Positions 16,030 through 35,700 of a DNA stretch of 64,000 nt are shown here, one piece after another. The position numbers were made by a program, and so were the translations under genes. Location of the stretch: contig NW_004797280.1 in NCBI RefSeq assembly GCF_000002075.1, positions 2,508,002-2,572,001 of the forward strand, given 5' to 3'. The notes beneath the pieces are model-generated. The model ran no database searches and had not been told where the DNA came from. It saw only the letters and a program-made list of their open reading frames with translations. How positions within the stretch are numbered: position 1 is the first letter of the stretch; each line of letters begins with the position of its first letter. This stretch comes from Aplysia californica. Its lineage: Eukaryota.

Positions 16030-16808
16030 CAGTGGAAACCATATATAACAGGCCCAGTAATAACAGGGATCCGGTAATAATCCCCGTTTTTTCCTACTAT
16101 TTGTCTCTATTAAAAGTTATAGGCAATAACAGGGCCTCATCGGAGCCCAACCGCTTATTTGAGGGACAAAGGCTCGTTAACAATGTGTAAAAAGTGAGTG
16201 TGTGAGAGAGAGAGAGAGAGTAACGCAGTGATGGAGCAAGCCCACGCAAGCGATGCCACAGCAAGCACACGCAGCCTGTGAAGCGAGAGAGGGCTGCGGT
16301 ATGCTGCAGACCTCGATCTAGCCCGAAACCTAAGAACACGTTTGTGTAATGTGTCACCAATGATGTCAATCGCAAGAGAAAATGCCTTTCAATTGACAAA
16401 AAAATACGAAATAATCCAGGCTGTTGACAAAAAGCAAGCTCCACTGGCAGAGATTTGTTGTCAGTTCGACATTCCACAAGGGTCGATTCACACCATTATT
16501 AAGGATAGAGAGAAGATAGTGGCTGCATACTGTAATGGAAAGTTTGCTCTGGATCGAAAGAAGATGAGACTACCCGATGCAGATGCTGTGGACCAAGCTC
16601 TTCTGATGTGGTTTAAGGAGGCAAGGAAAAAGTTTGTGCCTAAACTCCTGTTCGTGGGTACTTGTGGCAAAGGAAACTACCCATGAATAAGTACAGCTGG
16701 ATTAGTCCACAAATGCTTACTTTCCTTGTATTTCTGATTTAACAAGGATCGGATATAACAGGACATTTTCTCTACTCCCACCATCCCTGTTATATCAGGT
16801 TTCCACTG
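16030..16808 (+). mobile_element. Tigger/pogo non-autonomous element (family A) with HTH transposase remnant
   Basis: TA-CAGTGGAAACC...GGTTTCCACTG-TA. Internal frame [12 protein letters not shown]...[22 protein letters not shown]...RKKMR...[13 protein letters not shown] matches the psq HTH plus the start of the CENP-B HTH of pogo/Tigger transposases; truncated. Confidence 0.9.
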
Positions 16809-19935: not shown

Positions 19936-20666
19936 TAGTGTGCAGTCGAACTGCAAATTCATCATCTCTGCATGTATTCTTAATTGAAGTATCACCTGTG
20001 TCAAAAATTCGCTGCGAAATATTGAACTAATATGACAATATACATGCAGGAACAACTTTTTACATTCAAAAAATTAATTCAGTCATTACATACTTGCAGC
20101 TGGGTAAAAATGCACTTCAATTTAAGCATATATAATACGTCTGAGTTAAACTCAACAGTTTGATTTTAACAAATGTAAATTGTAAAGGAGAAAAGTTGCT
20201 GAGACCCAAGAAAAAGATCAACTTAACTTCAGATTAACTCAAGTGACTTCAACACAAACAGAGTCGACTGTATAATAATAATCATCTAAACACAGTTCAA
20301 GTTTAAAAATTCTCATATGACAAAAATAAAAGAGAGACATGCATCTCTATTTATCTAAATAGATGACCTAATCTTTTACCATTTCAGTTTTGATTTGTAT
20401 CTCTAAACATAAATCAGTGTGTGCAGATTTTTTAAGTTTAAATAGTGATCAAAACATTGCCCTGAGTAATAGTAATTGCACAAAGCAAACTTTTACAGCC
20501 ATAATACTATAAACTCCATTCTATTCCATAAAATTAAGAAAACCTTTTGTAACACCATCCTCATGCTATTGCCATTGTGTTAGGGTACCAGAGCTGAGGA
20601 AATGGGGCTGGACGGTATACAGAAACTTGTCTCCATTTCTTTGAAGAAAATCCAGAAAATTAAGAC

Positions 20667-21390
20667 CTAATAACAGTAGCTTGGTTCATTTGCTTGCACT
20701 TCATTGTTCACAAAAGAATTTGACAGAGAAAGTGGTTCCTTACATTTCAGAAAAACGGCCGATAAAAGTTCACCACTTGATTTCTGTATCAAAACATTGT
20801 TCACATGTTCTCCAACACAGGGAGCTTTACTGGTAGGTCCCACAGTCGTCAAAGACTTTCCGTGACGTTTCATCTGTTTTGACTCAGTAGTAAGTTGAGC
20901 TCCATTTCTTTTTTTCGCCCTTTTTCTTTTACCAAGAGGAACACCCGAGTATTTTCCAAAGGCGTGCAAGGCGCTAAGAAGTGCTGTTTGCGTTGATAGG
21001 TTGTGGAAGGTGGTGCAAAATTCGTTCACAGCAGGTATCATTGATTGGGGGTTTGCATCAAGTTCTTGAGACAGTTTTTGAAGGACCTCTTGCAATTTTC
21101 CTTTTGCTTCTGTTACCATACAGCTGTCTGTGGATGTGCTTTGTGAGGCGGCTTCCCTTACATGGGACACAGCCTCATCACCAGCATCGACAGCTTTGAT
21201 CTCTTCTGTATCTGACGTTGGCACATTGCAAGGAGGAGAGGAAGGATGTTGCAGATCTTCAGTTGTAGTTTTAGGCTTATACACTTGGGTATACAATCTG
21301 TGGGTAGTAAGTGAAGTTTGGTGAACAAAAAGGGACAGATCCACAGATACAAAGTATCAATGAGCTATTCACAGCATAGCTCGAGACATT

Positions 21391-21464
<74 letters not shown>

Positions 21465-24400
21465 GACAAATAGATAAACAAACAGACAGATGATCCAAGG
21501 TCAAAAAGTGCTAGAGTTGAAAAAAAACCTAAATTCACTTTCACTAATATGGGCAAAATTTCCCTCAGTTGTTGATGACATCCAACTTTTGGAAAAATGT
21601 TGGTAAAAGATAGATGCTTGTGATGATCGAATAATTTGATCATTTCATATCCACTAAAATTGTCCATTGTGATGTGTGCTGACAAAAACATAAATACTGA
21701 GATGAGTATATGTATTCAATGGGCCTGATACAGTGCCTTGGTTTAAAAACATTAAAGTTTGAAGGTTGACCTTGGCCACTGCACCATAAAACGACAAAAC
21801 ATTTTCACTCGTATTCATGCCGTTACGTAAGTGTCACAACTGACATTTTCAAAGTGGAAAGTTTTACTCTTGTAATTTTTCGAAACAATATATACATAGA
21901 CATATACACATACAGTGGAGTCCACTTATAACGACTCTTGAAATAACGAGAAGTCTATTATAAAGACACTATTCTAAAACCCTGTTTTTTTCCTTCTTTA
22001 TCTGTGTAAATAAAATACTGCTATAGTGCAATCAGACAAACACGCAAGTCAGTTAAAGCGGAATGTTGCTGCTACTGTGCACAACGCATAGGCCAGTTAT
22101 ACATATAAAACCTCGCCCGTTGAGAAACTTGTTGGTGAAGTAGCGAAACCAAGGACCTTACAACTCCTTGAGCGAAACAAAGAATGGGAGAGCCCACGTG
22201 TGCCAACAATGAAGGCCGGAGCGAATGAGTGGGGAGGGCGTGGCATGCGCAGACAAGCATAACGCATCGAGTGATAGGCCAGCCTAGCCTAGTCTAGATT
22301 ATCTAGGCCTACCACTACCATGCCTCTCACTTCTCCGATGCGGGGAAAGAGAGGTCACAGTGCTGTGATGGATGGAGCGAATGTGTGACGTGAGCAAGCA
22401 GACAGGACACACCACAGGGTGTGGTGGGGTGGGGAACAACACAGCAGGCGAGTTAGCACAGAGCTGTTCCTTTCTGATTGCCAATGCCTAGCTGTCAACA
22501 TTGCTAGCACAAAAGAAAGAAACTTGATTAAATTATTTTAGCAAGACCAAGAAGTCATGTTGAACAAAATCGTCTTCAGGGGAGAGAACAAAAAGAAATT
22601 AACAGAACACCAAACTCATAGATTAGCCCTACAGTATTATTTCCCTTGAGTTTATTACTGGATCCCTTATAACGAGAATACTGCTATAAAACTATAACGG
22701 ACATTTCGCATCAGTCCCCTCCCTCTCGTTATAACAGGATTCCACTATATTTTTATGACCTCTAAAAGCAGTGTTTAAAGCTTGCACCTATGATATGAAT
22801 CCAAGAATATAAGCTTTTCCCTTCCAAACGTGTGAATCTGCATCCTTTGTGACAAAATTCCCTGTGCCAACATAAATTTTTCACCACATGTCAAGAGAGA
22901 CATTGATTTCCTGGAATGTCTCATCCATTCCATGAGGAACTTTTCTTCTTTTCACTGACTGCCACTGACACTGGTAAGGATGCTATTTTGTTTGCTTTTT
23001 CAAACAGAGAAGAAAGGCATATTGTATAACAATTTTGGATGAATGATATGAACAGTAATTCCTTAGAATTAGGAGTACAACAGTTGAAGTCACAGAACCT
23101 TACATTCACCTTTTATGACCTTATGACAGGCAGAAGCAAAACAAAGTGTCTTTTTGATGATACGATCATACTACGGAACACACCACGATCAAGCAGTGTC
23201 GGTATTGTGGAGTTAGGCACTTCGCTGTCGCATGCTGATGAAGGAGACCCAAGTTCAGCCCCAGATTGGGGAGAAATTTTCATGGAGTATCTCCATCTTT
23301 CAACTGGGATGACCTCCCAGCCCGGGTTGGCCATAACAGGCAGGAGTTGGAAGTCTGCCTCTTCAAAGATCCAAATTGTGTTGTGGGGGGGTGTAAAAAC
23401 ACCAGCATTAAGAAAAAAATCACCACGATCCCTACTTTTTTCATACGCCTGATATCAGTTAAAGAATAACAAGTGGGAGCATACAAATATATACTGTGGC
23501 ACCAAACTTTTACTGTACAGGGCTATCTCTAGGTTAGCCCTTCAGGCACCCATGCCAAACATCGACCTATTGATCAGGAAGACATTTATTAAGTTTCATT
23601 ACCAGTTCAGTTTATCTCACCTGTACGCATAATGATAGCTGGGAAAATATGCTCCATCTTCAAAGGCTGCCTGATACTTTTCTTCCCCGAGCTCCACCCT
23701 TTTTAAAGTTTTGTACATATTCACAGCTGTCCCGGGTGTATGGCCACTGCGGAAAAGTTCCATGAGGCGTTCTTTAACCTCTGGCTGTACATCACGATAT
23801 GTCGGACGTGAAGCAGCCTCTACAGGATGGTTGTGGTTCCAGTGCACGATAATTTTTGTTGGAAGCTTGGGCATGTACTCATCTTTGCTTTTACTGAAAA
23901 TTTGAAAATGTGGAAAGGCAAATTCAAAAAACAAATATCTAATTCAATCAATGGCATACATAATGTATTGAAAATCAAAAGTTGAATCTAAAGCCTCGTG
24001 ACTTCTCATTGGTAATAAGGAACAAATGTTTATTCATATATTTTTCATTTTGTATTGTTGTTTCTCCATCAGATTGTTATCAAAACAGATGCAGAATAAT
24101 CAATTATTTTCTTATCTAGTACAGATTTGTCTTTACCACAGAACTATATTTCAACAAAATACTCAAAACAACTAGAGTGCAAAAATTAAAATGTTTACAT
24201 CAGGTTGCTCCCATTTTCTTCCCCACCTATTATTTTGTTTGCTGGGATGCCTCTGAGATTTGGTGAAAATACCTGAAAATTTAAGCAGTTGCATTTACAA
24301 ACAACAAAAAAGACATTTAATAGACACAACTTATACTTATATGGGGTTAAACAGAGGACAAATTAATAACTGCTCTTCTGGTGAAAATAACAAAAATAAA

Positions 24401-27400
24401 ATAAAACAGAAAAAACGGCATCACTGTGTTTTCATTCTCCTTCCCCACTAAATATTCCATCATCTTAGTACCCCCCCCCCCCTCGTCCACACACACATAC
24501 TTTCTAGCTCCCCTCCTACAGCTGAAATTCTCTTTTCTTAAATATGTCTTTGTATTAGTTTGACACTTCCAGTACACAAAAAAGAAGACTGGCTTCTGTA
24601 GTAATAATAATAATAAAAAAAAATAATATGAATTTATAACGCGCCAGAATCCACAAAGAGTGCTCGGTGGCGCTTATCACACACACACACACACACATCA
24701 ACAAAAGCTGTAAAGCTCAGTACCACTACGTCATGAATAAATTTTTTTTTAAAACTAAACAAAAAACAACAACAAGAAAACGACAGATGGCCTATTTCAG
24801 ATACAGAGTTCCAGCATTATAAATATACTTTCCTGAAAAACTTAATAACTGCTCTTCTGGTGAAAATAATAGAAAAAAACGGAATCCCTGTGTTCCCTGT
24901 GTAGAGGTTAGGCGCATCGTTGCCACATGCAAGAAACCCAGTTTCCATTTCAGAGTGAGGAGAACTTTTTTCGAGTATCTCGGTCTTTCTACTGGAATGT
25001 TGTACCCTCTTAGTCCAGGTTGGCCCTGACAGATGGCCTTAAATGATCAAAACGATGTCAACGCGGGAGTAAAAACATCTACATTTAAAAAAAAGAATTA
25101 TTAAATAAAAACAAGGCATTTCGAAATGGGAGGACGAGGAAACAGTAGGCAAGTTCTCGGCAGTTAAGGCAATCTTTATCAATTCAGATTTATTTCTAAA
25201 AAACAACAACCAAGTAAAACCTGCCTTTTTACTAGGTTGAGGAGTATTTTGCTATTAGTAGGCCTACACTAATTTAAAAAATAATACATTCTTGCAACAC
25301 TACACCCTTTTTCCTATGATTCATTTTACTTCCAGTCTCACATCAGCGAATATTCATGAAAAAAAATGTTAAACACTATCAAAAGGTTGAACATATTTCT
25401 GAAGATGAACATTTTTATTTCATTTCAGAAAAATATTTTCCTTTTATCTCAATACTTTATTTTGTCTTTAAAACTTGGAGACATGGCCAACATACAAACT
25501 ACAGCTTGAAACTACCCCCCCCCCCCCCCCCATTTGAAGAAAAGTAACTTACGAGGGAATGTTAAGTACTTTTTTTATGGTAACATGCATTCCAGCTTGG
25601 CATCCTGTCTTCCTTGTTTTGTACCTTTTGCCCCCAGTTCCAGAGTGCTGGCACAAGAACCATTTCTGTTTCAGTGAAGAAATTATGGTTACAATGTTAA
25701 TGATTAAACAGCAACAAAAGTCTGAATATACACCAAAAAAAAGAAAGATTGGAACCAATTCAATTTAGGACATATATATATAGGTTGGGGTTTGGTTTTT
25801 TTATCCTGATGCATCTTAACTAAAAATGTTTAAAATATATGTAAAATCAAGGCTTCTCACTTTTACAGCAAAATAAAATCAATTTCACAAAACTAGTTTA
25901 ACAGATTGTTTACTTTTTTTTTTTTCAGGAGATAGAGTACTGCAAAATATTCTTAGAATATAACTATGAAAATGAAAACTCATAAAACTTTATGTTCTGA
26001 ATTACTACAAGCAACACCCACTCTTAGTTTTCATCAACACTATCTCCTATCCATCAACTCACCTATGAACATTCATGAGCAATGTAAAAAACATAGAAGA
26101 AATGGTATGTTCAAAAAAATCCCAAAGCTTGAAATTACAGCTGAAACCTGATATAACAGGGACAGTGAGACCAGAGAAAAAGTCATGTTATATCAGATCC
26201 CTGTTAAATCAGAAATACAAGAAAAGTAAGCATTTGTGGACTAATCCAGCTGTATTTATTCATGGGTAGTTTCCCATAGCCTGCGCACGACACATTACAC
26301 GTGCGTGTAGCTCTCTAGGCTTAGGGCTAGATCGAGGTTTGCAGCACAATGCAGCCTTCTCTCGTGGCCATGTGGCAGGCCTGCGAATGACACATTACAT
26401 GTTCGTGTAGCACGGCTTAGGGCTAGATCAAAATCTGCAGGATACCGCAGCCCTCTCTTGCTTCACCCGTTGCGTGTGCTTGCAGCGGTGTGGCTTGCGT
26501 GGGCTTGCTCCATCACTATGTTACTCTTTCTCTTAATTTTTACACATTGTTAACGAGCTCTGTCCTTGCTATAAGGGGTTGTTCAAATATAATCTTACAC
26601 TTTTTTTTTGACTTTTTAACCCCCCCCCCCCCCCCCTTTCTTACACTTTTCTTACATTTGCCTTCCTTTTGATGAAAACGATATTCATCTATGCTGAATA
26701 GAAGTCGAAATATTTGCAATTGAAGGAGGTGTGGATCACCTGATTTCAGAGGTAAATTTAGTCAGAAAACGGCTGCCAAAGTTTGATTACTTCAATAGCT
26801 TGAGAGCCTTTAAAACTGAAAAATAACATATTTTGTGCATTTAATGAACGTTTTCCAGTAAAATTTGCATTGAAATGTGTTATTATATGGACGTAAAAGG
26901 TGTTAAGCGGAAAAACAAAAATTCAATAAAAGTTCCCAAACGTGCGGAAAAATGCCATTTTTTTTCACTTTCATTATATTGACGAGCGCCTGATTTCACC
27001 ACGGTGCCTCACAAGAGTAAATCATTTAAGCAAAATATTGCATACACTCTTTCTTACTAATAAGGAAAAAATTGAGACTCCTGTCAATGACAAAAGGGCC
27101 TTAATTACAAATAAAACCAAGTTACAGTAGAATTCTGATAAAGTCAACACCCCGGACAGAAAAAAATGTTGACTTTGAGCAAGGTTGACTTTATCCATTG
27201 TACTTCTGGCCATTGAAAATTGAAGATGACTGCTACAAAATGACAAAGTACCTGGTAATAAGCAAGATGTAATCTCAATTTCAGGGAGTATAATTTTGAA
27301 GTTGTCACCAAAACAGGAGATAATGAAAGAACAAAGTAATTGGTGGTGTGTACACCAGTAGCTCGGGTGAAATATCTCTTCTTAAATTAATTCATTTTGG

Positions 27401-29404
27401 GATTTAGCCCCAAATTGTTGACTTTACGCAAGCTTAACACTCACGCGGTTGACAGTATCAGAAACACAATCAGATCTACTTAAAATTACTTGAACAAAAA
27501 GGTAAAAAATGAGACCACAGTGAGGTGTTGACTGAAAGCAAGAGTTGACTTAAAGTAAGCAAGTTGACTATCAGGATTCCACTGTATCTGTTATTACTGA
27601 TCATTATGCTGAAAACAAATAGTGAAATTAGTTATCATCAATAAAGGCAGTGTTCTTCAGTATGTAAAAAATATTTTTTCACCTCACAAAAGTGTAAGAC
27701 ACCCCCNNNNNNNNNNNNNNNNNNNNNNNNNNNNNNNNNNNNNNNNNNNNNNNNNNNNNNNNNNNNNNNNNNNNNNNNNNNNNNNNNNNNNNNNNNNNNN
27801 NNNNNNNNNNNNNNNNNNNNNNNNNNNNNNNNNNNNNNNNNNNNNNNNNNNNNNNNNNNNNNNNNNNNNNNNNNNNNNNNNNNNNNNNNNNNNNNNNNNN
27901 NNNNNNNNNNNNNNNNNNNNNNNNNNNNNNNNNNNNNNNNNNNNNNNNNNNNNNNNNNNNNNNNNNNNNNNNNNNNNNNNNNNNNNNNNNNNNNNNNNNN
28001 NNNNNNNNNNNNNNNNNNNNNNNNNNNNNNNNNNNNNNNNNNNNNNNNNNNNNNNNNNNNNNNNNNNNNNNNNNNNNNNNNNNNNNNNNNNNNNNNNNNN
28101 NNNNNNNNNNNNNNNNNNNNNNNNNNNNNNNNNNNNNNNNNNNNNNNNNNNNNNNNNNNNNNNNNNNNNNNNNNNNNNNNNNNNNNNNNNNNNNNNNNNN
28201 NNNNNNNNNNNNNNNNNNNNNNNNNNNNNNNNNNNNNNNNNNNNNNNNNNNNNNNNNNNNNNNNNNNNNNNNNNNNNNNNNNNNNNNNNNAAAAGGCACT
28301 CCTATGAGAGTGATAAATATAGTGCGAGTTGCCCCCCCATCCAAATCACATTCTCTCAACCTGCCAGATCCAATGTATCTGACTGAAAGGTGTGCAATTT
28401 CTAATGCTGAGTAAATGAAGTCAATAAATCTAACATTCTTTCTATCTTCCAATACAAAGCAGAAAGACCAACTAACAGTACCGGTACTGATATATGCACA
28501 AACACGTCTGGAACAGATAAAAGGAAACTGTTGGTGATATTCATAGTCATAGGGAAAGTCAGGTGGTTTTCTATGTGACCACTCCCGACTACCTGTCATC
28601 TATTGCAGCTCAGTATGGACGACTCAGACATTTTGAGAGACTTTACTTAAGTAATTCGCTGAACAATTACAAGCTCTTCAAGCCAAACTGAACTTGACTT
28701 ATTATCAATTCTATGGGCTTAAATCTAGTAGTGTTAAGTTCTGACCACAGAAGTTTTTATTTGCGAATACACAGGCGCTCCTTTCTTGTGTCCGCAGACA
28801 ATGAGCAAATAAACAAATCATTTGCTGAATCAAACTGCGGGCAGGCAGAAAATGATTGGTAAACTGCAAGGATTCATTTTATTCACTGCTTGAGACGCTG
28901 CTCGTTTGTGTTTTCATGAACAAGCAAGCGTCCTGAACTGGTGATGTTAATCTTTGCTGGCTCGTTCATGATGTCACAATACAGTCCCGTCTGTGCCTTT
29001 CATTCGATCTGCTAGGCCCAAGATGTAACGCTGATCACAAGAGAGTTTGGTGTATTGGGCACTGCTAGGACCTAAATATTATTTGAAACAAGCATTTTGT
29101 CTTGGAAGGTGTATACACCCCTCCACAACCCCAACCACCCTCCCCACCTACCCCACTTTCTCGCGCAATAATGTACGAGTGGTCCGGTATTCTTCAATCT
29201 TCCCCTTCCAAGATTTCAGAGGGACAGTAGGCCAGGGCTGCCTTTTATTTACAGTTTACAGTAATTTAGGCAGCCTACAGACTACAGTTTAACGGTAGTT
29301 TAACTTTTTTTAAATAAAAGACTGAAATTTAAGGCAGGAAAGAATATAACCCAAAACAAGTGGTCAAAAGATACCTTCACGTGCTGTATTTGCTCTTCCT
29401 TCAT
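20667..29404 (-). CDS. Uncharacterised MULE-transposase-derived protein with WRKY/GCM1-like zinc finger and no DDE core; one exon in assembly gap
   Basis: Exons (minus): 29404-29375 (MKEEQIQHVK); 28301-[gap]-about 27688; 25665-25553 (KWFLCQHSG...KTGCQAGMHVTIK); 23893-23621 (HWNHNHPVEAA...RDV...LFRSGHTP...FPSYHYAYR); 21297-20667 (LYTQVY...LLSALHAFGK...KRKRAKKR, stop). The last three exons join in frame at GT-AG sites. The first exon and the gap-edge boundaries are less certain. Confidence 0.75.
21391..21490. repeat. (GACA)n microsatellite
   Basis: Direct reading; degenerate right end. Confidence 0.95.
21913..22747. mobile_element. Tigger-like MITE family B
   Basis: TA-CAGTGGAGTCCACTTATAACGA...TCGTTATAACAGGATTCCACTA-TA. 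Inverted homologue at 30723-32415. Confidence 0.85.
23195..23420 (+). mobile_element. tRNA-derived SINE family 2 (diverged)
   Basis: Degenerate A/B boxes, shared core GGAGAA...GAGTATCTC.ATCTT and tail GTAAAAACACC...An; relatives at 2025-2245 (-) and 24895-25095 (+). Confidence 0.55.
24895..25095 (+). mobile_element. tRNA-derived SINE family 2 (diverged)
   Basis: GTGTAGAGGTTAGGCGC head, TCGAGTATCTCGGTCTT core, GTAAAAACATC...An tail. Confidence 0.55.
26138..26575 (-). mobile_element. Tigger family A truncated copy
   Basis: CAGCTGAAACCTGATATAACAGGG start, body aligns with 36767-37205, second TIR missing. Confidence 0.75.
26670..27013. mobile_element. Partial copy of GGTGGAATCAGG TIR family
   Basis: Aligns with 45600-45971 and ends TTGACGAGCGCCTGATTTCACCACGGTGCCTCACA. 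Confidence 0.65.
27125..27584. mobile_element. Tigger-like MITE
   Basis: TA-CAGTAGAATTCTGATAAAGTCAAC...GTTGACTATCAGGATTCCACTG-TA; internal GTTGACT repeats. Confidence 0.75.
27707..28290. other. Assembly gap (N run)
   Basis: 584 N. Confidence 1.
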
Positions 29405-29761: not shown

Positions 29762-32700
29762 ATGAAACGTTCGATAGAACTAGTTAGCGCCTGGACAATG
29801 CCATACGTTGGCTGTAAGTTTCTTATTATGGGCATTGATTGATATATATAGAAGAGATAGAATCTAGAATCTTACTTAATTTTAACGCAGTGGCTACGTT
29901 CACGGCGCAGTGAATGTAGTTGGCAGGCTACGTTCACGGCGCCCTGAATGCAGTTTGCAGGCTCTGTTGAGGCTACGTCAAGGAGATTAAAAGTACCTCA
30001 ACAGCGCCTGCAAACTGCATTCAGGGCGCCGTAAACGTAGCCTGCCAACTACATTCACGGCGCCGTGAACCTAGCCTGCAGACTACGTTCACGGCACCGT
30101 GAACGTAGCCACTGCGTAATTTTAATGAATAAGCAATTAAGCAAGGCCTAATAATAATATAATCATATTCATTTATAGATCTAGACTCTAGTCAATAGTC
30201 TAGCCGTACTTAGATCTAGGTTTGGCCCTATCGACTCAAACCTGTTGAGTACACAGGTCTCATTAGATCTAGATCTAGATCTAGATCTATCTCGTAATTA
30301 TTCAAGTTTAAAATACATGCAAGTCAGTAAGACTCCTTTTGGTTTTGTCTGAATACTATTTAGGCATTGCAAACAAACAAAATTCATTTTTACAATTCAG
30401 CCATCATTATTATGTACGGCTAGCCTCTTCCATGAAATAATATCCTATCCGACCTATCATTGTAAAATAAGTCATTGGCCTAAATAATAATATTGAATAC
30501 AATTGAATGATAATATTAGCTGGTTGTTGTGCTGGCAATCTCCGCTTTTGCCACCAAGAGTAATGTAATGTCAATAGTAACTCTATTATCTATATTGGCT
30601 GGGGCATATTATAGGGTCAGGGGGTAGGGATAAGGATTGTAGGCTGTAGGATAGAAGTAAGGGTAGATCTAGCCTAATTATAATAAGCCATCGTTGAGGT
30701 CAAAACCGTGCCGTTACGTGTACAGTGGAATCCTGTTATAACGAGAGGGAGAGGACCGGAGCAAAATACAGTGGAAACCTGATATAACAGGGATGGTGGG
30801 AGTAGAGAAAATGTCCTGTTATATCCGATCCCTGTTAAAACAGAAATGCAAGGAAAGTAAGCATTTGTGGACTAATCCAGCTGTACCTATTCATGGGTAG
30901 TTTCCTTTGCCACAAGTACCCACAAACAGGTATTGGCACCAACTTTCTCCTTCCCTCCTCAAACCACATCAGAAGAGCTTGGTCCTCAGCATCTGCATCG
31001 GGTAGTCTCGTCTTCTTTCGATCCAGAGCAAACTTTCCATTGGAGTATGCTGCCACTATTTTCTCTCTATCCTTGATAATGGTGTGAATCGACCCTTGTG
31101 GAAGGTCGAACTGACGACAAATCTGCTAGTGGAGCTTGCTTCTTTTCAACAGCCTGGATTATTTCGTATTTTTTGTCAATTGAAAGGCATTTTCTCTTGC
31201 GCTTGAATTCGTTGGTGACACATTACGCTTGCGTGTTTCTAGGTTTCGGGCTAGATCGGGGTCTGAAGAGCACACCGCAGCCCTCTCTCGCTTCACATGC
31301 TGCATGTGCTTGCAATGGCATGGCTTGCGTGGGCTTNNNNNNNNNNNNNNNNNNNNNNNNNNNNNNNNNNNNNNNNNNNNNNNNNNNNNNNNNNNNNNNN
31401 NNNNNNNNNNNNNNNNNNNNNNNNNNNNNNNNNNNNNNNNNNNNNNNNNNNNNNNNNNNNNNNNNNNNNNNNNNNNNNNNNNNNNNNNNNNNNNNTGTCC
31501 CTGCTATAACCGGTTGGGCTCCGATGAGGCCTTGTTATTGCCGATAACTTTTAATAGAGACAAAGAGTAGGAAAAACGAGTATTTCAAAAATCCCTGTTA
31601 TTACCGGATCCCTGTTATTACCGGGCCTGTTATATATGGTATCCACTGTATCCGTTATAGCAGGATTCTCACTATAAGGGATCCAGTAATAAATTCAAGA
31701 GAAACTGTAAAGTAGGCCTAATCTATGAGTTTGGTGTTCTGTTTATTTCCTTTTGCTATCTCTCCTGATGATGATTTTGTTTCAACATGACCTCTAGGTC
31801 TTACTTGATAAAAAATCGAATCAGGTTTCTTTCTCTAGCGCTAGATCTAGCAATGTTGACAGACAGCTCGGCGTTGGTGATCAGAAAGAAAGGGCTCTGG
31901 GCTAACTCACCCGCTGTGTTTTCCCCCACACTACCACACCCTGTGGTGCATTCCGTCAGCTTATGCACATCACACATTCACTCCATCCATCACATTTCTT
32001 TGACCTCTCCATCCCCACATCGGAGAAGTGAGAGGCCTGGTAGGCCTTGATAATCTAAACTAGGCTTACGCTGACCTATCACGCGATGCGTTCTGCTTGT
32101 CTGCGCATGTGATACCCTCCCTACTCAGTCGCTCTGGCCTTCGTTGTTGACACACATGGGCTCTCCTATTCTTTGTTTCGCTAGATCACCAACAAGTTTC
32201 TCAACTGGCGAGGTTTTATATTATGCATAATTGGCCCATGCACTGCGCACAGCATCAGCTATATTCCGCTATAACAGACTCGCGTGTTTGTCTGATTGCG
32301 CTATAGCAGTATTTTATTTACAAAGGTAAAGAAGAGAAAAAACCAGGGTTTTAGAATAGTGCCTTTATAATAGACTTCTCGTTTTTTCCGGACTCGTTAT
32401 AAGTGGACTCTACTGTATATAAAATTATGCCTTATAAAATGCGAATGATATGTCAAGTTAATACATGCCATTCAATAGAGCCTTGCCACTGAAATAAAAC
32501 TGATATCACAGGTCACAGTGTCACTTTAATGGTGCACTGGCACACTCATTATTATTACATTTTCTCTATTGAATTATGGTATCATACTGGATTGTGGACT
32601 GCAGATATATAGGTAATAAGAGGGCTCCGGTTTGAATCACTTTAATAATATTCCGAATTTCGGTTACTTTTGGGGGGTGTTAAGGCTCTCCATCCGTCTG

Positions 32701-35700
32701 GCTTGATTCTATCGGACATGATTGTTAAATTCAGAGGTCCTCATGTCTCTTAACCTTATAACACAGTGTTGAAAGAGATGTTAAACCAGCACAGGGGCAA
32801 TGACGATCTACTCCACAGAACGTCATGTTTTGAGGTTGGCTTGCTACATGTATCATGTAAAAGCTGACAAAAATTGACTTAACTTTTGTCTTGAGTATCC
32901 TATAGGCGCCTACTGAAATGAAGTTGCTTTTTTCTTAGAGGCACATTATTAGATCAGCCAAAACACAGCATATAAAAAAATTGAGGGCCAATAAATTGAC
33001 CTGTGATAGCTCCAGAATTTAAGCTGACTCATGGTACACCTACTGCAAACTAAATCATGGCAGGAAAGGAGCATTAATTTAAGTAAGTTTTTTTCTTGAA
33101 TTGTGAGATATTTGTCTCCTGGTTACTCTGATTTTGGATAGGCTGAATATGATACTTTGAATGAGAGGATGAGGAGGCTCACTCAATATTTAAAAAATGG
33201 CTAATTTTCAAAGACTTTTGAAATATAAGCTATATTGATTATGTCCATGTTGACTGTTGTTTTATAAATTCCATTAAAAAAATGCATTCAAGCTTTACTA
33301 AAGCAACTCGTATAAAAAAAATAGTAGCATGCAAATAACGAAATCGACAGGATGCTGTATTCTTTTAATTAAATACGAACTTAGCTCTACTGTATGTAGT
33401 GTTTTGAATACAAAGAATATACACGAATAGGAAAAAATTCAGATCCAAAATATTATATGCGTGTTTAGCTATGTCTGTAATTTTGCATGCTTTTCTTGAC
33501 AGTGGGAACCTTCAAGACACGCGGCTATGATCTCTTGTATACCACACTTGATGCTGCTCTTGCTGCTGGGTACAGATCTTTTGGTAAAGTAAACTGCCCT
33601 TGAGTTAAAAGATTCCTAGAAATTTTAATTAGACTCTTCCAAGATTTAATTTGTAGCACCGTGTGTTCAGTAACCTCACTGCAGTTGGTACTATGGTAGG
33701 TATGAACGAATTTCTATATTCTTTCTGTTCTTGCTTTTTTTATCATTTACTGCGGGTCGATAATTGAAATTCCGATGTCAGTGAGTGGCTATGGTCACTT
33801 AACATTATTTCTACCTTTTTAGAAATTTGCTTTGTGCAGATATTCAAGGCTACTTAGGTCTCTACCAATTGTTCTTGATGCCTTTCTGGTCAACTTGTTT
33901 ATTTTCATGATGTGCTGTCTTCCCAAATTGCTACCATAGCAAGAGATACCAAAATTTATCAGTTTCTCTTGCAGTCATGTAGAATATCTGAAGGATGGAT
34001 GGATTCAGATTGAAAGACCTAAGTTTCCTCAGAAAGTACAGCCTCTGATTTACCTTTTTAACGATATTGTTTACGTGATTTTGCCATGTAAATTTGTTGT
34101 CAATTGAAGACCAAGATATTTGTATGAATCTGTGATTTCAGATTTAAATTGTTTCTTGTTCAATTATGAGTGGTGGGATTGTTGGTTTTTCTCTTCTAAA
34201 ATCAAAAATCATTTCCTTTGGTTTTTTTGAGAGGTTCACTTTCAGAATGTTTGAATTGCACCATTTATAAAAAATATGCTATTGACTGACATTGTGTGCT
34301 GAATAAAATACCCCAACAAGTAACCTGTATTGGTTTCTATGGAAAATGTTTGAATCACTGACCACATACATTTATACAACGTTGAAGATTTGCTTCAGGC
34401 ATGATGAAAATATGAAGTTTTAAAGATTTCATCTCCACGATTGAAAATAAGAGGTCTGAACTGGTCTGTAATAGCAATCGGCCACTAGTCAGACACTCAT
34501 GCACTTTGGAATACTGTACTGAGTACATCATTAATAGCTGCGTCATGGGCATTTGATGTTTCAGTTAGTTTGTAAGATCTTTTGTGATCAAAATATGATT
34601 TGGCAGACTTTCATATTTTATCGCTATGAAATTCAACTGTACAGTGGAGTCTGCTAAACCAAAATGGTTATCTGAAAACAGCAGTAAGCTGAAAGGAAAT
34701 TGAATCCCTGATTTTATTCTTCACTATTTGATCAATTTCTCTAAAGTGAAAACATGGCTAAACTGAAGAAAATCCAATAGTTCTGCAAATTTCGGTTAAA
34801 GCAGACTCCATTGTATGTGCAACAACAACCTTGTTTTTTGGGTTTTTTTCTTTCAGTCTGTGTTTGTCTCAAACTGCATCCCTACCACTGAGTACCTAGA
34901 TTGTCTCACTTTCCTGACTTTAATTTGACTTGTTCCTCACATTCTTGCCAGCTTTTGATTTTCTAATGAAAGAAGTATTGCTTCCTTTTTTTGTCTTTAT
35001 GTAAACTAAATTGATCCAAGTCATATTTTATTCTGATTCTATTTTGTCATGTTTTGTCTGCTGTAATTCTAAGGCTGGATGTTAATGAAAAATACATGCA
35101 ACATTATTGTTGAGCCCCTCTTTCTGTAAAAATTTCCTTTTATCTGCTTGACATTATGGAGACGAACACCCATCTCATTAGCATGATTGTTATTCTGCCT
35201 TTTCAGATACAGCATCTGTGTACAGAAATGAAACAGATATTGGGAAAGCATTAAAAGAACTGCTGCCTAAGTACAATTTGACAAGGAAGGATATATTTAT
35301 TACAAGTAAATTAGGTAAATTTGTAGTTAATGCAACAAGTGTTTTCCTTTCTCAGTAAGAATAATAGTAATAGCTCATCCGTCAATGTCTGATGATGACC
35401 AATACATCCGCAGAGAAGAATTTAATATTTCTCCATTTCTCAGTACCATATTTAAGATACAATGAATAACAGGGCTTGATGTAAATCTGTTAGAAACATG
35501 TACAGCTTTAAAAATGATATGCTACCCATTAGTGTAATTCTAATTATAGCTGATCTTGGCTCTTTTCCATTTGCATGCCCCACTGCCCATACGCCATTGA
35601 AGTCATATATATATGTACATACATTAATATAGACATACATTTACACACCCAAGTGCACATGAAGGCTTTCACTGACACTTGCACTTATAGACATGGAATG

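What the first reader, a model, noticed from the sequence alone, without database searches (positions are those of the whole stretch)
20667..29404. Candidate domesticated Mutator-transposase gene that kept the DNA-binding finger and lost the catalytic core
Seen: a spliced reading frame with no stops or frameshifts in the visible exons, carrying C-Q-H...C...H-N-H, then RDV...LFxSGHxPxxA...YRLY, a low-complexity linker, LLSALHAFGK and a basic KRKRAKKR patch. It has no TIRs of its own and shares a promoter region with a metabolic gene. Known: C..C..HxH fingers of the WRKY/GCM1/FAR1 fold are the DNA-binding modules of MULE transposases and have been domesticated repeatedly (FAR1/FHY3, Aft1). From memory, the motifs resemble uncharacterised invertebrate and fish proteins that normally continue into a MULE DDE and SWIM region after YRLY; I have not verified this by search. 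Inference: the intron at 21298-23620 sits where the catalytic core would be, leaving a nuclear DNA-binding protein that may be an undescribed transcription factor or transposon repressor.
Basis: partly seen in the sequence, partly recalled or inferred. Interest (0 to 1): 0.8.

Follow-up and report, generated by a model that had tools for sequence, protein, structure and literature searches.

The report
Core-less Mutator-transposase-derived gene in Aplysia
This is a real, spliced and expressed sea-hare gene (LOC101862154) that descends from a Mutator-type transposase, keeps its DNA-binding front end and a short tail module, and has lost the cutting enzyme.

Summary
On the minus strand, exons at 29404-29375, 25665-25553, 23893-23621 and 21297-20667 encode NCBI's 415-aa "uncharacterized protein LOC101862154" of Aplysia californica. 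Both visible internal splice junctions occur in transcript contigs of three runs. Residues 11-77 (67 codons) match nothing visible in the window and probably lie in the N gap, which I did not fill.

The protein belongs to a large animal family (590 hits) built as:
- an N-terminal domain of about 185 aa (C..C..HxH finger plus helix-turn-helix),
- a core of about 410 aa (MULE, RNase-H-like, SWIM),
- a C-terminal helical module ending in "FGK".

LOC101862154 has the N and C parts but no core. So do at least 28 of the 78 relatives that could be classed, and they are interleaved with full-length ones on the tree.

All four introns match, in position and phase, those of a full-length octopus gene whose core lies in its last exon. 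The YR|LY intron is therefore ancestral, and the core was deleted inside exon 4.

Host maintenance is likely but unproven. The Aplysia genome has three family loci, all core-less. There are no flanking inverted repeats. The frame is intact although an old repeat sits in intron 3. No orthologue was found, so no dN/dS could be computed. The shared promoter with the AKR gene is not shown. This is a new member of a known kind. The scan had not noted this gene on other DNA.

The parts
29375..29404 (-). Coding exon 1 (residues 1-10, MKEEQIQHVK). Ends in phase 0, donor GTATCT.
   Evidence: 100% to P0002 residues 1-10. The intron after it aligns with the urchin and octopus intron 1.
27707..28290 (.). 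Assembly gap. Probable site of the unseen exon of 67 codons (P0002 residues 11-77, first strands and helix of the finger domain). Not filled.
   Evidence: No visible match for residues 11-77. The X8 transcript contig has 307 nt upstream of 25665. The homologous urchin exon is also 67 codons, phase 0 to 0.
25553..25665 (-). Exon with residues 78-115. Holds Zn ligands C82 (25653-25651) and C99 (25602-25600). Ends TC|GTAAGT, phase 2.
   Evidence: Joint 23893|25553 in X8, X6 and X9.
23621..23893 (-). Exon with residues 115-206. Holds H135 (23835-23833) and H137 (23829-23827) of the HxH, and most of the helix-turn-helix subdomain (from about 23796). Ends AG|GTGAGA, phase 2, inside R206 of YRLY.
21298..23620 (-). 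Intron 3 (2323 nt). An ancestral family intron, not the site of the lost core.
   Evidence: Joint 21297|23621 in three runs. Same position and phase in the urchin and octopus genes. No core relic.
21910..22750 (.). Copy of a high-copy repeat of about 842 nt inserted in intron 3 (at least 1813 candidate copies in the genome, 81-89% identical to this one). Used as a rough clock.
20667..21297 (-). Last coding exon (residues 206-415 plus TAG). The 3' UTR runs on below 20600.
21135..21278 (-). Disordered Ser/Thr/Pro/acidic linker (residues 213-260). Stands where relatives have the core of about 410 aa (MULE, RNase-H-like, SWIM).
   Evidence: pLDDT under 50 for residues 222-260. Domain mapping of relatives.
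20937..21134 (-). C-terminal three-helix module (residues 261-326, ...LLSALHAFGK). Also found at the C-terminus of full-length family members.
   Evidence: 84 of 150 hits carry it; E 5e-20; pLDDT above 90.
20907..20930 (-). Basic patch KRKRAKKR (residues 329-336), a likely nuclear localisation signal (inference). One synonymous variant at 20916 (GCG>GCA) in run X8.

Best explanation
**What it is.** LOC101862154 is an expressed gene of at least five exons. It descends from an intron-bearing animal Mutator-like (MULE) transposase gene.

**What it keeps**
- A two-part DNA-binding N-terminus. Residues about 20-140 form a WRKY/GCM1-type zinc finger with ligands C82, C99, H135 and H137. Residues 148-212 form a three-helix helix-turn-helix of the kind transposases use on their terminal repeats.
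- The family's C-terminal three-helix module (261-326).
- A basic nuclear-signal-like patch.

**What it lost.** The core of about 410 aa (RNase-H-like DDE plus SWIM) went through an in-frame deletion inside the last exon. This is shown by comparison with relatives. Without it the protein cannot cut or join DNA.

**How it most likely works (inferred).** The host keeps it as a nuclear, sequence-specific DNA-binding protein. That could be a transcription regulator, or a binder and repressor of MULE-like repeats. The C module probably provides self-association or partner contacts.

**Shown:** gene structure, splicing, family membership, absence of the core, low copy number, absence of TIRs.
**Inferred:** zinc and DNA binding, nuclear location, host-level selection, function.
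For: - **Gene and transcripts:**
- **Family and architecture:** 590 hits. Long members carry MULE, ZSWIM1-3 RNase-H-like and SWIM. My HMMs class the 78 hits used for the tree as 42 full, 28 short and 8 long-linker.
- **Conserved residues:** the window protein keeps the invariant C82, C99, H135 and H137 and the near-invariant positions of a 70-sequence alignment.
- **Predicted structure:** pLDDT above 90 for residues 1-215 and 261-320. Residues 33-149 match Aft2-DNA 4lmg (Z 6.5, rmsd 2.7, 76 aligned). WRKY domains score 0.87-0.97 Foldseek probability. Residues 148-222 match the HTH domains of TnsB, Mos1, SETMAR and Tc3 (Z 4.7-6.7). The ESM Atlas gives si:dkey-75a21.2 (0.94), FAR1/ZSWIM3_N (0.89) and MULE clusters by structure.
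- **Deletion inside the last exon:** four introns are shared in position and phase with the octopus full-length gene, whose last exon holds core and C module. The urchin short protein equals the octopus protein minus residues 280-711.
- **Host maintenance:** only three family loci in 927 Mb, all core-less. No TIRs. No core relic. Intron 3 carries a repeat copy 81-89% identical to its kin. At 4-8% neutral change, the 346 visible codons would stay intact with probability of about 0.006 down to 4e-5. All visible splice sites are canonical. The one exonic variant seen is synonymous.
Against: - No orthologue in any other species. The nearest relatives are 27-35% identical, and the protein sits on a long branch (1.43) in an unresolved polytomy. 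So there is no dN/dS and no synteny.
- The long branch could reflect relaxed constraint.
- Short N+C forms arise repeatedly from full-length ones: at least 7 changes are forced by well-supported branches. This is what ordinary internal-deletion derivatives of DNA transposons look like.
- The clock argument is rough. It assumes star-like repeat history, an indel rate of 0.1 per substitution, and that the repeat landed after the gene settled at this locus.
- Structural matches are middling (Z under 8, Foldseek E above 0.01).
- Expression is low in the one raw-read poly(A) run (depth 0.1-0.4).
- Pfam FAR1 and ZSWIM3_N models do not hit the protein.
Confidence: 0.65

Rival explanations
1. It is a stranded internal-deletion derivative of a MULE: a dead non-autonomous copy that happens still to be transcribed and open, with no host function.
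For: - Short and full forms are interleaved on the tree, and breakpoints differ between lineages.
- The urchin short gene is 79% identical to an octopus full-length gene, which points to recent mobility of the family.
- No orthologue was found for the Aplysia gene.
- The gene sits on a long terminal branch.
Against: - Single locus with no TIRs.
- No full-length family member in the genome that could have mobilised it.
- The frame is intact over at least five exons with canonical splice sites, although intron 3 holds an old repeat.
- All invariant family residues are kept, and the domains are modelled with confidence.
Confidence: 0.25
2. It is the vertically inherited Aplysia orthologue of an ancient bilaterian core-less gene, the same gene as fish si:dkey-75a21.2, urchin LOC100891206 and Priapulus LOC106805740.
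For: - Same N+C architecture, aligned end to end at 27-30% identity.
- Intron positions shared with the urchin gene.
- The top ESM Atlas cluster is si:dkey-75a21.2.
Against: - The same introns occur in the full-length octopus gene, so they do not mark a core-less ancestor.
- Short forms are not one clade. Several sit next to full-length ones with strong support.
- A killifish protein named Si:dkey-75a21.2 is full length, 744 aa.
- Deletion breakpoints differ between short forms.
Confidence: 0.08
3. It is a member of another known family with a similar finger (CARF/ALS2CR8, GCM, FLYWCH), or an annotation artefact.
For: ESM Atlas rows for ALS2CR8 and GCM at 0.79-0.86, which count as leads only.
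Against: - PF15299 hits a different Aplysia locus (C942), not this one.
- There are no Pfam hits to these families.
- Spliced transcripts exist.
- The relatives carry MULE cores.
Confidence: 0.02

Closest known systems
Fish 'si:dkey-75a21.2' and other uncharacterised short animal proteins (S. purpuratus LOC100891206, Priapulus LOC106805740, Macrosteles LOC128996731)
   Same: Same three-part layout: finger plus HTH domain, short linker, C-terminal FGK module, no core. Aligned end to end at 27-30% identity. The urchin gene has the same four introns.
   Different: Not demonstrably orthologous. The short forms are scattered among full-length ones on the tree. None is characterised, and no paper in the held library mentions the fish or the Aplysia gene.
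Full-length animal MULE-type genes of the same family (e.g. Octopus bimaculoides LOC106873077, 795 aa; Lineus, Antedon and lamprey proteins)
   Same: Homologous N domain and C module, and identical intron positions and phases.
   Different: They carry the core of about 410 aa (MULE, RNase-H-like, SWIM) in the last exon. The Aplysia gene lacks it.
Yeast Aft1/Aft2 (Rcs1) and plant FAR1/FHY3, the classic MULE-derived transcription factors (Babu et al. 2006, PMC1702500)
   Same: WRKY-GCM1-type finger of transposase origin. Aft2 bound to DNA (4lmg) is the best structural match to residues 33-149. Babu et al. already noted animal members of this finger family without transposase domains.
   Different: FHY3/FAR1 keep the MULE core and SWIM. 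Aft proteins have no HTH or FGK module of this kind. Pfam FAR1 and AFT models do not hit this protein.
Aplysia 'FHY3A-C' of Mukherjee and Moroz 2023 (PMC10027918)
   Same: MULE-derived candidate transcription factors catalogued in the same genome.
   Different: Different genes. FHY3A is LOC106012298 and has a transposase core. LOC101862154 is not in their text or in the held supplements, three of which were cut when stored.
Truncated transposase repressors such as the P-element KP protein (comparison from my own knowledge)
   Same: An internal deletion leaves the DNA-binding N-terminus, giving a protein that can occupy transposase sites without cutting. This is a model for how the gene may work.
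   Different: Different superfamily. KP acts on co-resident P elements, whereas no cognate full-length element was found in Aplysia.

Membership tests
WRKY-GCM1 zinc-finger superfamily | C-x(n)-C ... H-x-H zinc-ligand pattern on a four-stranded sheet | tested here: met
   C82, C99, H135 and H137 are invariant across 70 family members. The AF2 model has strands at 61-66, 74-82, 102-108 and 127-133.
WRKY-GCM1 zinc-finger superfamily | Significant structural similarity to solved WRKY, GCM or Aft domains | tested here: inconclusive
   Aft2 4lmg scores Z 6.5 (rmsd 2.7, 76 residues) and WRKY33 scores Z 5.1. Foldseek probability is 0.87-0.97 for WRKY and Aft2, but E is 0.08 or more. These are the best-fitting folds, yet Z is under 8.
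MULE (Mutator-like) transposase | RNase-H-like DDE catalytic core (Pfam PF10551 / PF21056) | tested here: not met
   No Pfam hit on the exons. My core HMM does not hit P0002 or any frame of the window. Relatives do have the core.
MULE (Mutator-like) transposase | SWIM zinc finger after the core | tested here: not met
   Absent from P0002. Present in some long relatives.
Mobile MULE element | Terminal inverted repeats, target-site duplication, multiple copies | tested here: not met
   No flanking inverted repeats of 24 nt or more. One copy of these exons in 927 Mb, and three family loci in all.
Pfam FAR1 (PF03101) / ZSWIM3_N (PF21599) DNA-binding domain | Match to the curated profile | tested here: not met
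   No hit at E up to 1 on the exons, and none at 0.001 in 70 relatives. Only language-model leads at 0.81-0.89.
Domesticated (exapted) transposase gene | Immobile, low copy, expressed, intact frame | tested here: met
Domesticated (exapted) transposase gene | Syntenic orthologues in other species under purifying selection (dN/dS well below 1) | not testable with these tools
   No orthologue in 5.8 billion or 1.84 billion protein sets. No eukaryote genome collection is on hand. Contigs labelled organism B are identical in the exons.
CARF / ALS2CR8 (PF15299) | Match to the ALS2CR8 profile | tested here: not met
   The profile finds another locus (C942) in this genome and not the window gene.

The most novel reading that the evidence does not exclude
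The N-plus-C 'mini-transposase' is a repeatedly selected product, not debris. On this reading, an in-frame deletion inside the last exon of this intron-bearing MULE lineage has, many times across Metazoa, produced a DNA-binding protein that hosts keep. Aplysia holds three such core-less genes and no autonomous copy. One of the other two has kin in Biomphalaria and Plakobranchus. LOC101862154 would then be an undescribed lineage-specific transcription regulator or transposon guard.
Probability: 0.3. Interest if true: 0.6.

Novelty: new member of a known kind. Interest (0 to 1): 0.42.

Why it matters
- **A concrete, testable example.** It adds an animal transposase-derived DNA-binding gene to a short list. 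The gene is absent from the published catalogue of transposon-derived transcription factors in Aplysia, a neuroscience model.
- **The route of core loss is visible.** An in-frame deletion occurred inside one large exon while four ancestral introns were retained. The same N+C outcome recurs in fish, urchins, priapulids and insects.
- **If the short forms are functional**, they would be a general way for hosts or elements to make site-specific binders or repressors.
- **If they are not**, the gene is an ordinary transposon relic.

Tried and rejected
**Searches that came back blank**
- Pfam on single exons and on the paralogue.
- PDB sequence search with the paralogue's N-terminal region.
- Word search with exon 4 alone: nothing. 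With P0002: only itself.

**Leads rejected**
- CARF/ALS2CR8 from the ESM Atlas: the profile hits another locus.
- Relics of the catalytic core in intron 3 or anywhere in the window: none, best E 0.44.
- TIRs around the gene: none. The long inverted pairs are two copies of a dispersed repeat.
- TIRs around the octopus and urchin genes: only weak collinear 38-39 nt pairs in octopus, not convincing.
- My first splice guesses for the 25.6 kb exon were two bases off. The reads corrected them.

**Steps that could not be done**
- dN/dS: no orthologue. Contigs labelled organism B are identical in the exons, apart from two single-T homopolymer insertions in one low-depth run.
- The Priapulus locus is not on record.

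They were searched exon by exon by reference. The full-length sequence used for alignment, folding and the ESM Atlas is the database protein P0002, which the search itself returned.
- I built no consensus of the intron repeat.
- In some searches a script joined neighbouring exon parts of the urchin and octopus loci only to locate their junctions. Nothing joined was printed or searched.
Full report
**1. What is in the sequence**

The region is animal DNA (GC about 0.32-0.43). Translated exon by exon:
- 25665-25553 gives ...KWFLCQH...GCQAG...
- 23893-23621 gives ...HWNHNHP...RDV...LFRSGHTPGTA...YHYAY(R).
- 21297-20670 gives LYTQVY..., a low-complexity stretch, ...LLSALHAFGK, KRKRAKKR and a tail, ending at TAG 20669-20667.

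The word search names it NCBI "uncharacterized protein LOC101862154 [Aplysia californica]". The window is contig C10 of a 927-Mb assembly.

**2. The gap, tested first**

P0002 residues 11-77 (67 codons) match nothing in the visible window. Neither tblastn nor a family HMM run over all six frames finds them. The N gap 27707-28290 lies between exon 1 and the 25665 exon. A transcript contig of run X8 has 307 nt upstream of 25665, which fits 201 + 30 coding nt plus 76 nt of leader. Exon 1 ends in phase 0 and the 25665 exon starts in phase 0. The homologous exon of the sea-urchin relative is also 67 codons, phase 0 to 0.

One exon is therefore unseen, probably inside the gap. Continuity across the gap cannot be shown from the window. 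I did not look its letters up, and for that reason did not fetch P0002's own locus from other records.

**3. Transcripts**

I laid four runs on 20600-26000.
- Contigs of X8 (organism A), X6 and X9 (labelled organism B) join 21297|23621 and 23893|25553. The skipped parts begin GT and end AG on the minus strand.
- Intron bins free of repeats have no depth. The exon share of the stretch (about 0.19) equals the share of words these runs hold.
My first guesses for the 25.6-kb exon were two bases off.
- The raw poly(A) run X21 has only 0.1-0.4-fold depth on the last exon, so expression there is low.
- Differences inside exons: 20916 C>T in X8, which is GCG>GCA, synonymous (Ala333). Two single-T insertions in homopolymers occur in the low-depth X6 contigs only, and are probably assembly errors.

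**4. The family**

A profile of exon 3 plus a distant paralogue found 590 proteins at E up to 0.001 among 1.84 billion. Seventy of them share the consensus ...RCQHNT...SKNTxCPA...HNH...RDVS...LFxxGHxPxxAL...CYRLYY..., and a C-terminal ...LxSALxxFGK. C82, C99, H135 and H137 (P0002 numbering) are invariant. Of those 70, 18 match Pfam MULE, 6 ZSWIM1-3 RNase-H-like and 3 SWIM. In long members these domains lie directly after the N domain.

With my own HMMs for the three parts, 78 of the 150 listed hits had a complete N domain and an assignable layout:
- 42 full (N, core of about 410 aa, C).
- 28 short (N, short linker, C).
- 8 with a long non-homologous linker.

P0002 is short: N at 31-208, C at 269-326, no core. 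Named members include:
- Fish si:dkey-75a21.2, S. purpuratus LOC100891206, Priapulus LOC106805740 and a leafhopper protein (short).
- Octopus LOC106873077, Lineus, Antedon, Diadema and lamprey proteins (full).

**5. Fold**

AlphaFold2, run on a 67-sequence family alignment, gives pLDDT above 90 for residues 1-215 and 261-320. It predicts disorder at 222-260 and 329-415.
- Foldseek against the PDB finds nothing at E up to 0.001. Its highest-probability rows are WRKY domains (7p8k_B 0.97, 2ayd 0.87) and Aft2-DNA (4lmg_B 0.91).
- VIA-align puts residues 33-149 on Aft2 (Z 6.5, rmsd 2.7, 76 residues).
- VIA-align puts residues 148-222 on transposase and homeodomain-type helix-turn-helix domains: TnsB Z 6.7, Mos1 Z 6.1, SETMAR DNA-binding domain on its TIR Z 5.9, Tc3 Z 4.7.

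These Z values are middling, so the fold assignment is supported but not proven. It agrees with the ligand pattern and with the ESM Atlas (si:dkey-75a21.2 at 0.94, FAR1/ZSWIM3_N at 0.89, and MULE, FAR1 and AFT clusters by structure). The RDV...LFxSGHxPxxA...YRLY stretch is thus a second, HTH-type DNA-binding subdomain.

**6. Where the core went**

I mapped the exon junctions of two relatives.

| Gene | Intron 1 | Intron 2 | Intron 3 | Intron 4 |
|---|---|---|---|---|
| Urchin short gene | after residue 34, phase 0 | after 101, phase 0 | inside codon 152, phase 2 | inside R241 of YRLY, phase 2 |
| Octopus full-length gene | after residue 35, phase 0 | after 101, phase 0 | inside codon 152, phase 2 | inside R241 of YRLY, phase 2 |
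| Aplysia | after K10, phase 0 | after N77, phase 0 | inside S115, phase 2 | inside R206 of YRLY, phase 2 |

Aplysia introns 1, 2 and 4 fall in the same alignment columns as the others. Intron 3 sits within one residue of the others, beside a variable loop.

In octopus the last exon encodes everything after YR|LY: core, SWIM and C module. So the YR|LY intron is ancestral to the family. The Aplysia core was lost by an in-frame deletion inside exon 4, where the disordered linker (residues 213-260) now stands. Neither the intron nor any other part of the window contains a trace of the core.

The urchin short protein is 79% identical over 279 residues to the octopus protein. It lacks octopus residues 280-711, then resumes at 65% identity in the C module. 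Other short forms retain 31-57 residues of the core. The breakpoints therefore differ between lineages.

**7. Transposon relic or host gene?**

On a tree of the N domain, short and full forms are interleaved. The tree needs 16-19 changes, and well-supported branches force at least 6-7. P0002 sits alone on a long branch (1.43) in a basal polytomy. Short forms therefore arise repeatedly, as internal-deletion derivatives of DNA transposons do. The architecture alone does not prove domestication.

Evidence for host maintenance in Aplysia:
- **Copy number.** The exons are single copy. A four-species profile finds only three family loci in the genome: the window, an intronless 1158-aa gene on C709, and a multi-exon paralogue on C181. 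All three have the C module and none has a core. More than 44 unrelated Pfam-MULE matches occur elsewhere.
- **No termini.** No inverted repeats flank the gene.
- **Intact frame over time.** Intron 3 holds a copy of a repeat of about 842 nt, with at least 1813 candidate copies that are 81-89% identical to it. If that copy has taken 4-8% neutral change since insertion, the 346 visible codons would be expected to carry 2-4 nonsense changes and 3-7 frameshifts. The chance of staying intact would then be about 0.006 down to 4e-5. This is a rough estimate. It assumes a star-like repeat history, 0.1 indels per substitution, and insertion after the gene settled here.
- **Conserved features.** All invariant family residues and all visible splice sites are kept.

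Evidence against:
- No orthologue was found, so no dN/dS or synteny test was possible.
- The branch is long.

The C709 paralogue does have kin in Biomphalaria (LOC106051836, 42% identity, clade support 99) and Plakobranchus. All of them lack the core. At least that lineage is therefore a conserved heterobranch gene.

**8. Surroundings**

AKR exons on the plus strand are recognisable at 33481-33600, 35182-35355, about 36.0 kb, 37.4 kb and 39.0 kb. The stretch between them and exon 1 holds a foldback element, pogo-like fragments, a second N gap and a copy of the intron repeat. A shared promoter is not shown.

**9. Comparison with what is known**

- Babu et al. 2006 (PMC1702500) defined the MULE finger families. 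They noted animal members without transposase domains as possible recruited transcription factors.
- Mukherjee and Moroz 2023 (PMC10027918) list three "FHY3" genes in Aplysia, but these are other loci with cores. LOC101862154 is not in their text or in the held supplements, three of which were cut when stored.
- No paper in the held library mentions LOC101862154 or dkey-75a21.2.
- Dupeyron et al. 2019 (PMC6446971) describe non-TIR MULEs and frequent horizontal transfer. This fits the octopus-urchin pair.

**10. Verdict**

The MULE origin and the loss of the core are supported. Domestication is likely (about 0.65) but unproven. This is a new member of a known kind, of moderate interest.

Noticed in passing
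L011 (S. purpuratus) and L012 (Octopus bimaculoides): The urchin short gene LOC100891206 and the octopus full-length gene LOC106873077 are 79% identical over 279 aa and share all four introns. Other cross-phylum pairs in the family are 25-35% identical. This looks like horizontal transfer of an intron-bearing MULE between marine phyla, followed by a 432-aa deletion.
   Followed up: partly
G000:C181:484410-491526 (-) (L016/L017) and G000:C709 (L006:5492-8968): Two further core-less family genes in Aplysia. One is multi-exon, with the family's intron positions plus one extra. The other is an intronless 1158-aa ORF, possibly a retrocopy. The C709 gene has core-less kin in Biomphalaria (LOC106051836) and Plakobranchus.
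   Followed up: partly
window 21910-22750 and 31655-32418: Two inverted copies of a dispersed repeat of about 842 nt (at least 1813 candidate copies, 81-89% identical). It is very abundant in transcript contigs, with depths in the thousands. Its class was not determined.
   Followed up: partly
window 29885-30117: Nested palindromes (81-84 nt arms, 87-95% complementary) about 480 nt upstream of the ATG. This is the foldback element already noted by the scan. I did not check its target-site duplication or any link to the gene.
   Followed up: no
window 16342-16686 (+) and 30835-31056 (-): Open frames resembling the N-terminal HTH (psq/CENP-B type) of pogo/Tigger transposases. They are fragments of another repeat family.
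   Followed up: no
window about 31330-31500: A second run of N lies between this gene and the AKR gene. The AKR first exon was not located.
   Followed up: no
window 20908 and 23852: Contigs of run X6 carry single-T insertions in A/T homopolymers inside exons. They are absent from X8 and X9, so they are probably low-depth assembly errors rather than frameshift alleles.
   Followed up: no
G000:C942:221746-224264 (-): The Aplysia homologue of CARF/ALS2CR8 (PF15299). It is multi-exon and unrelated to the window gene.
   Followed up: no
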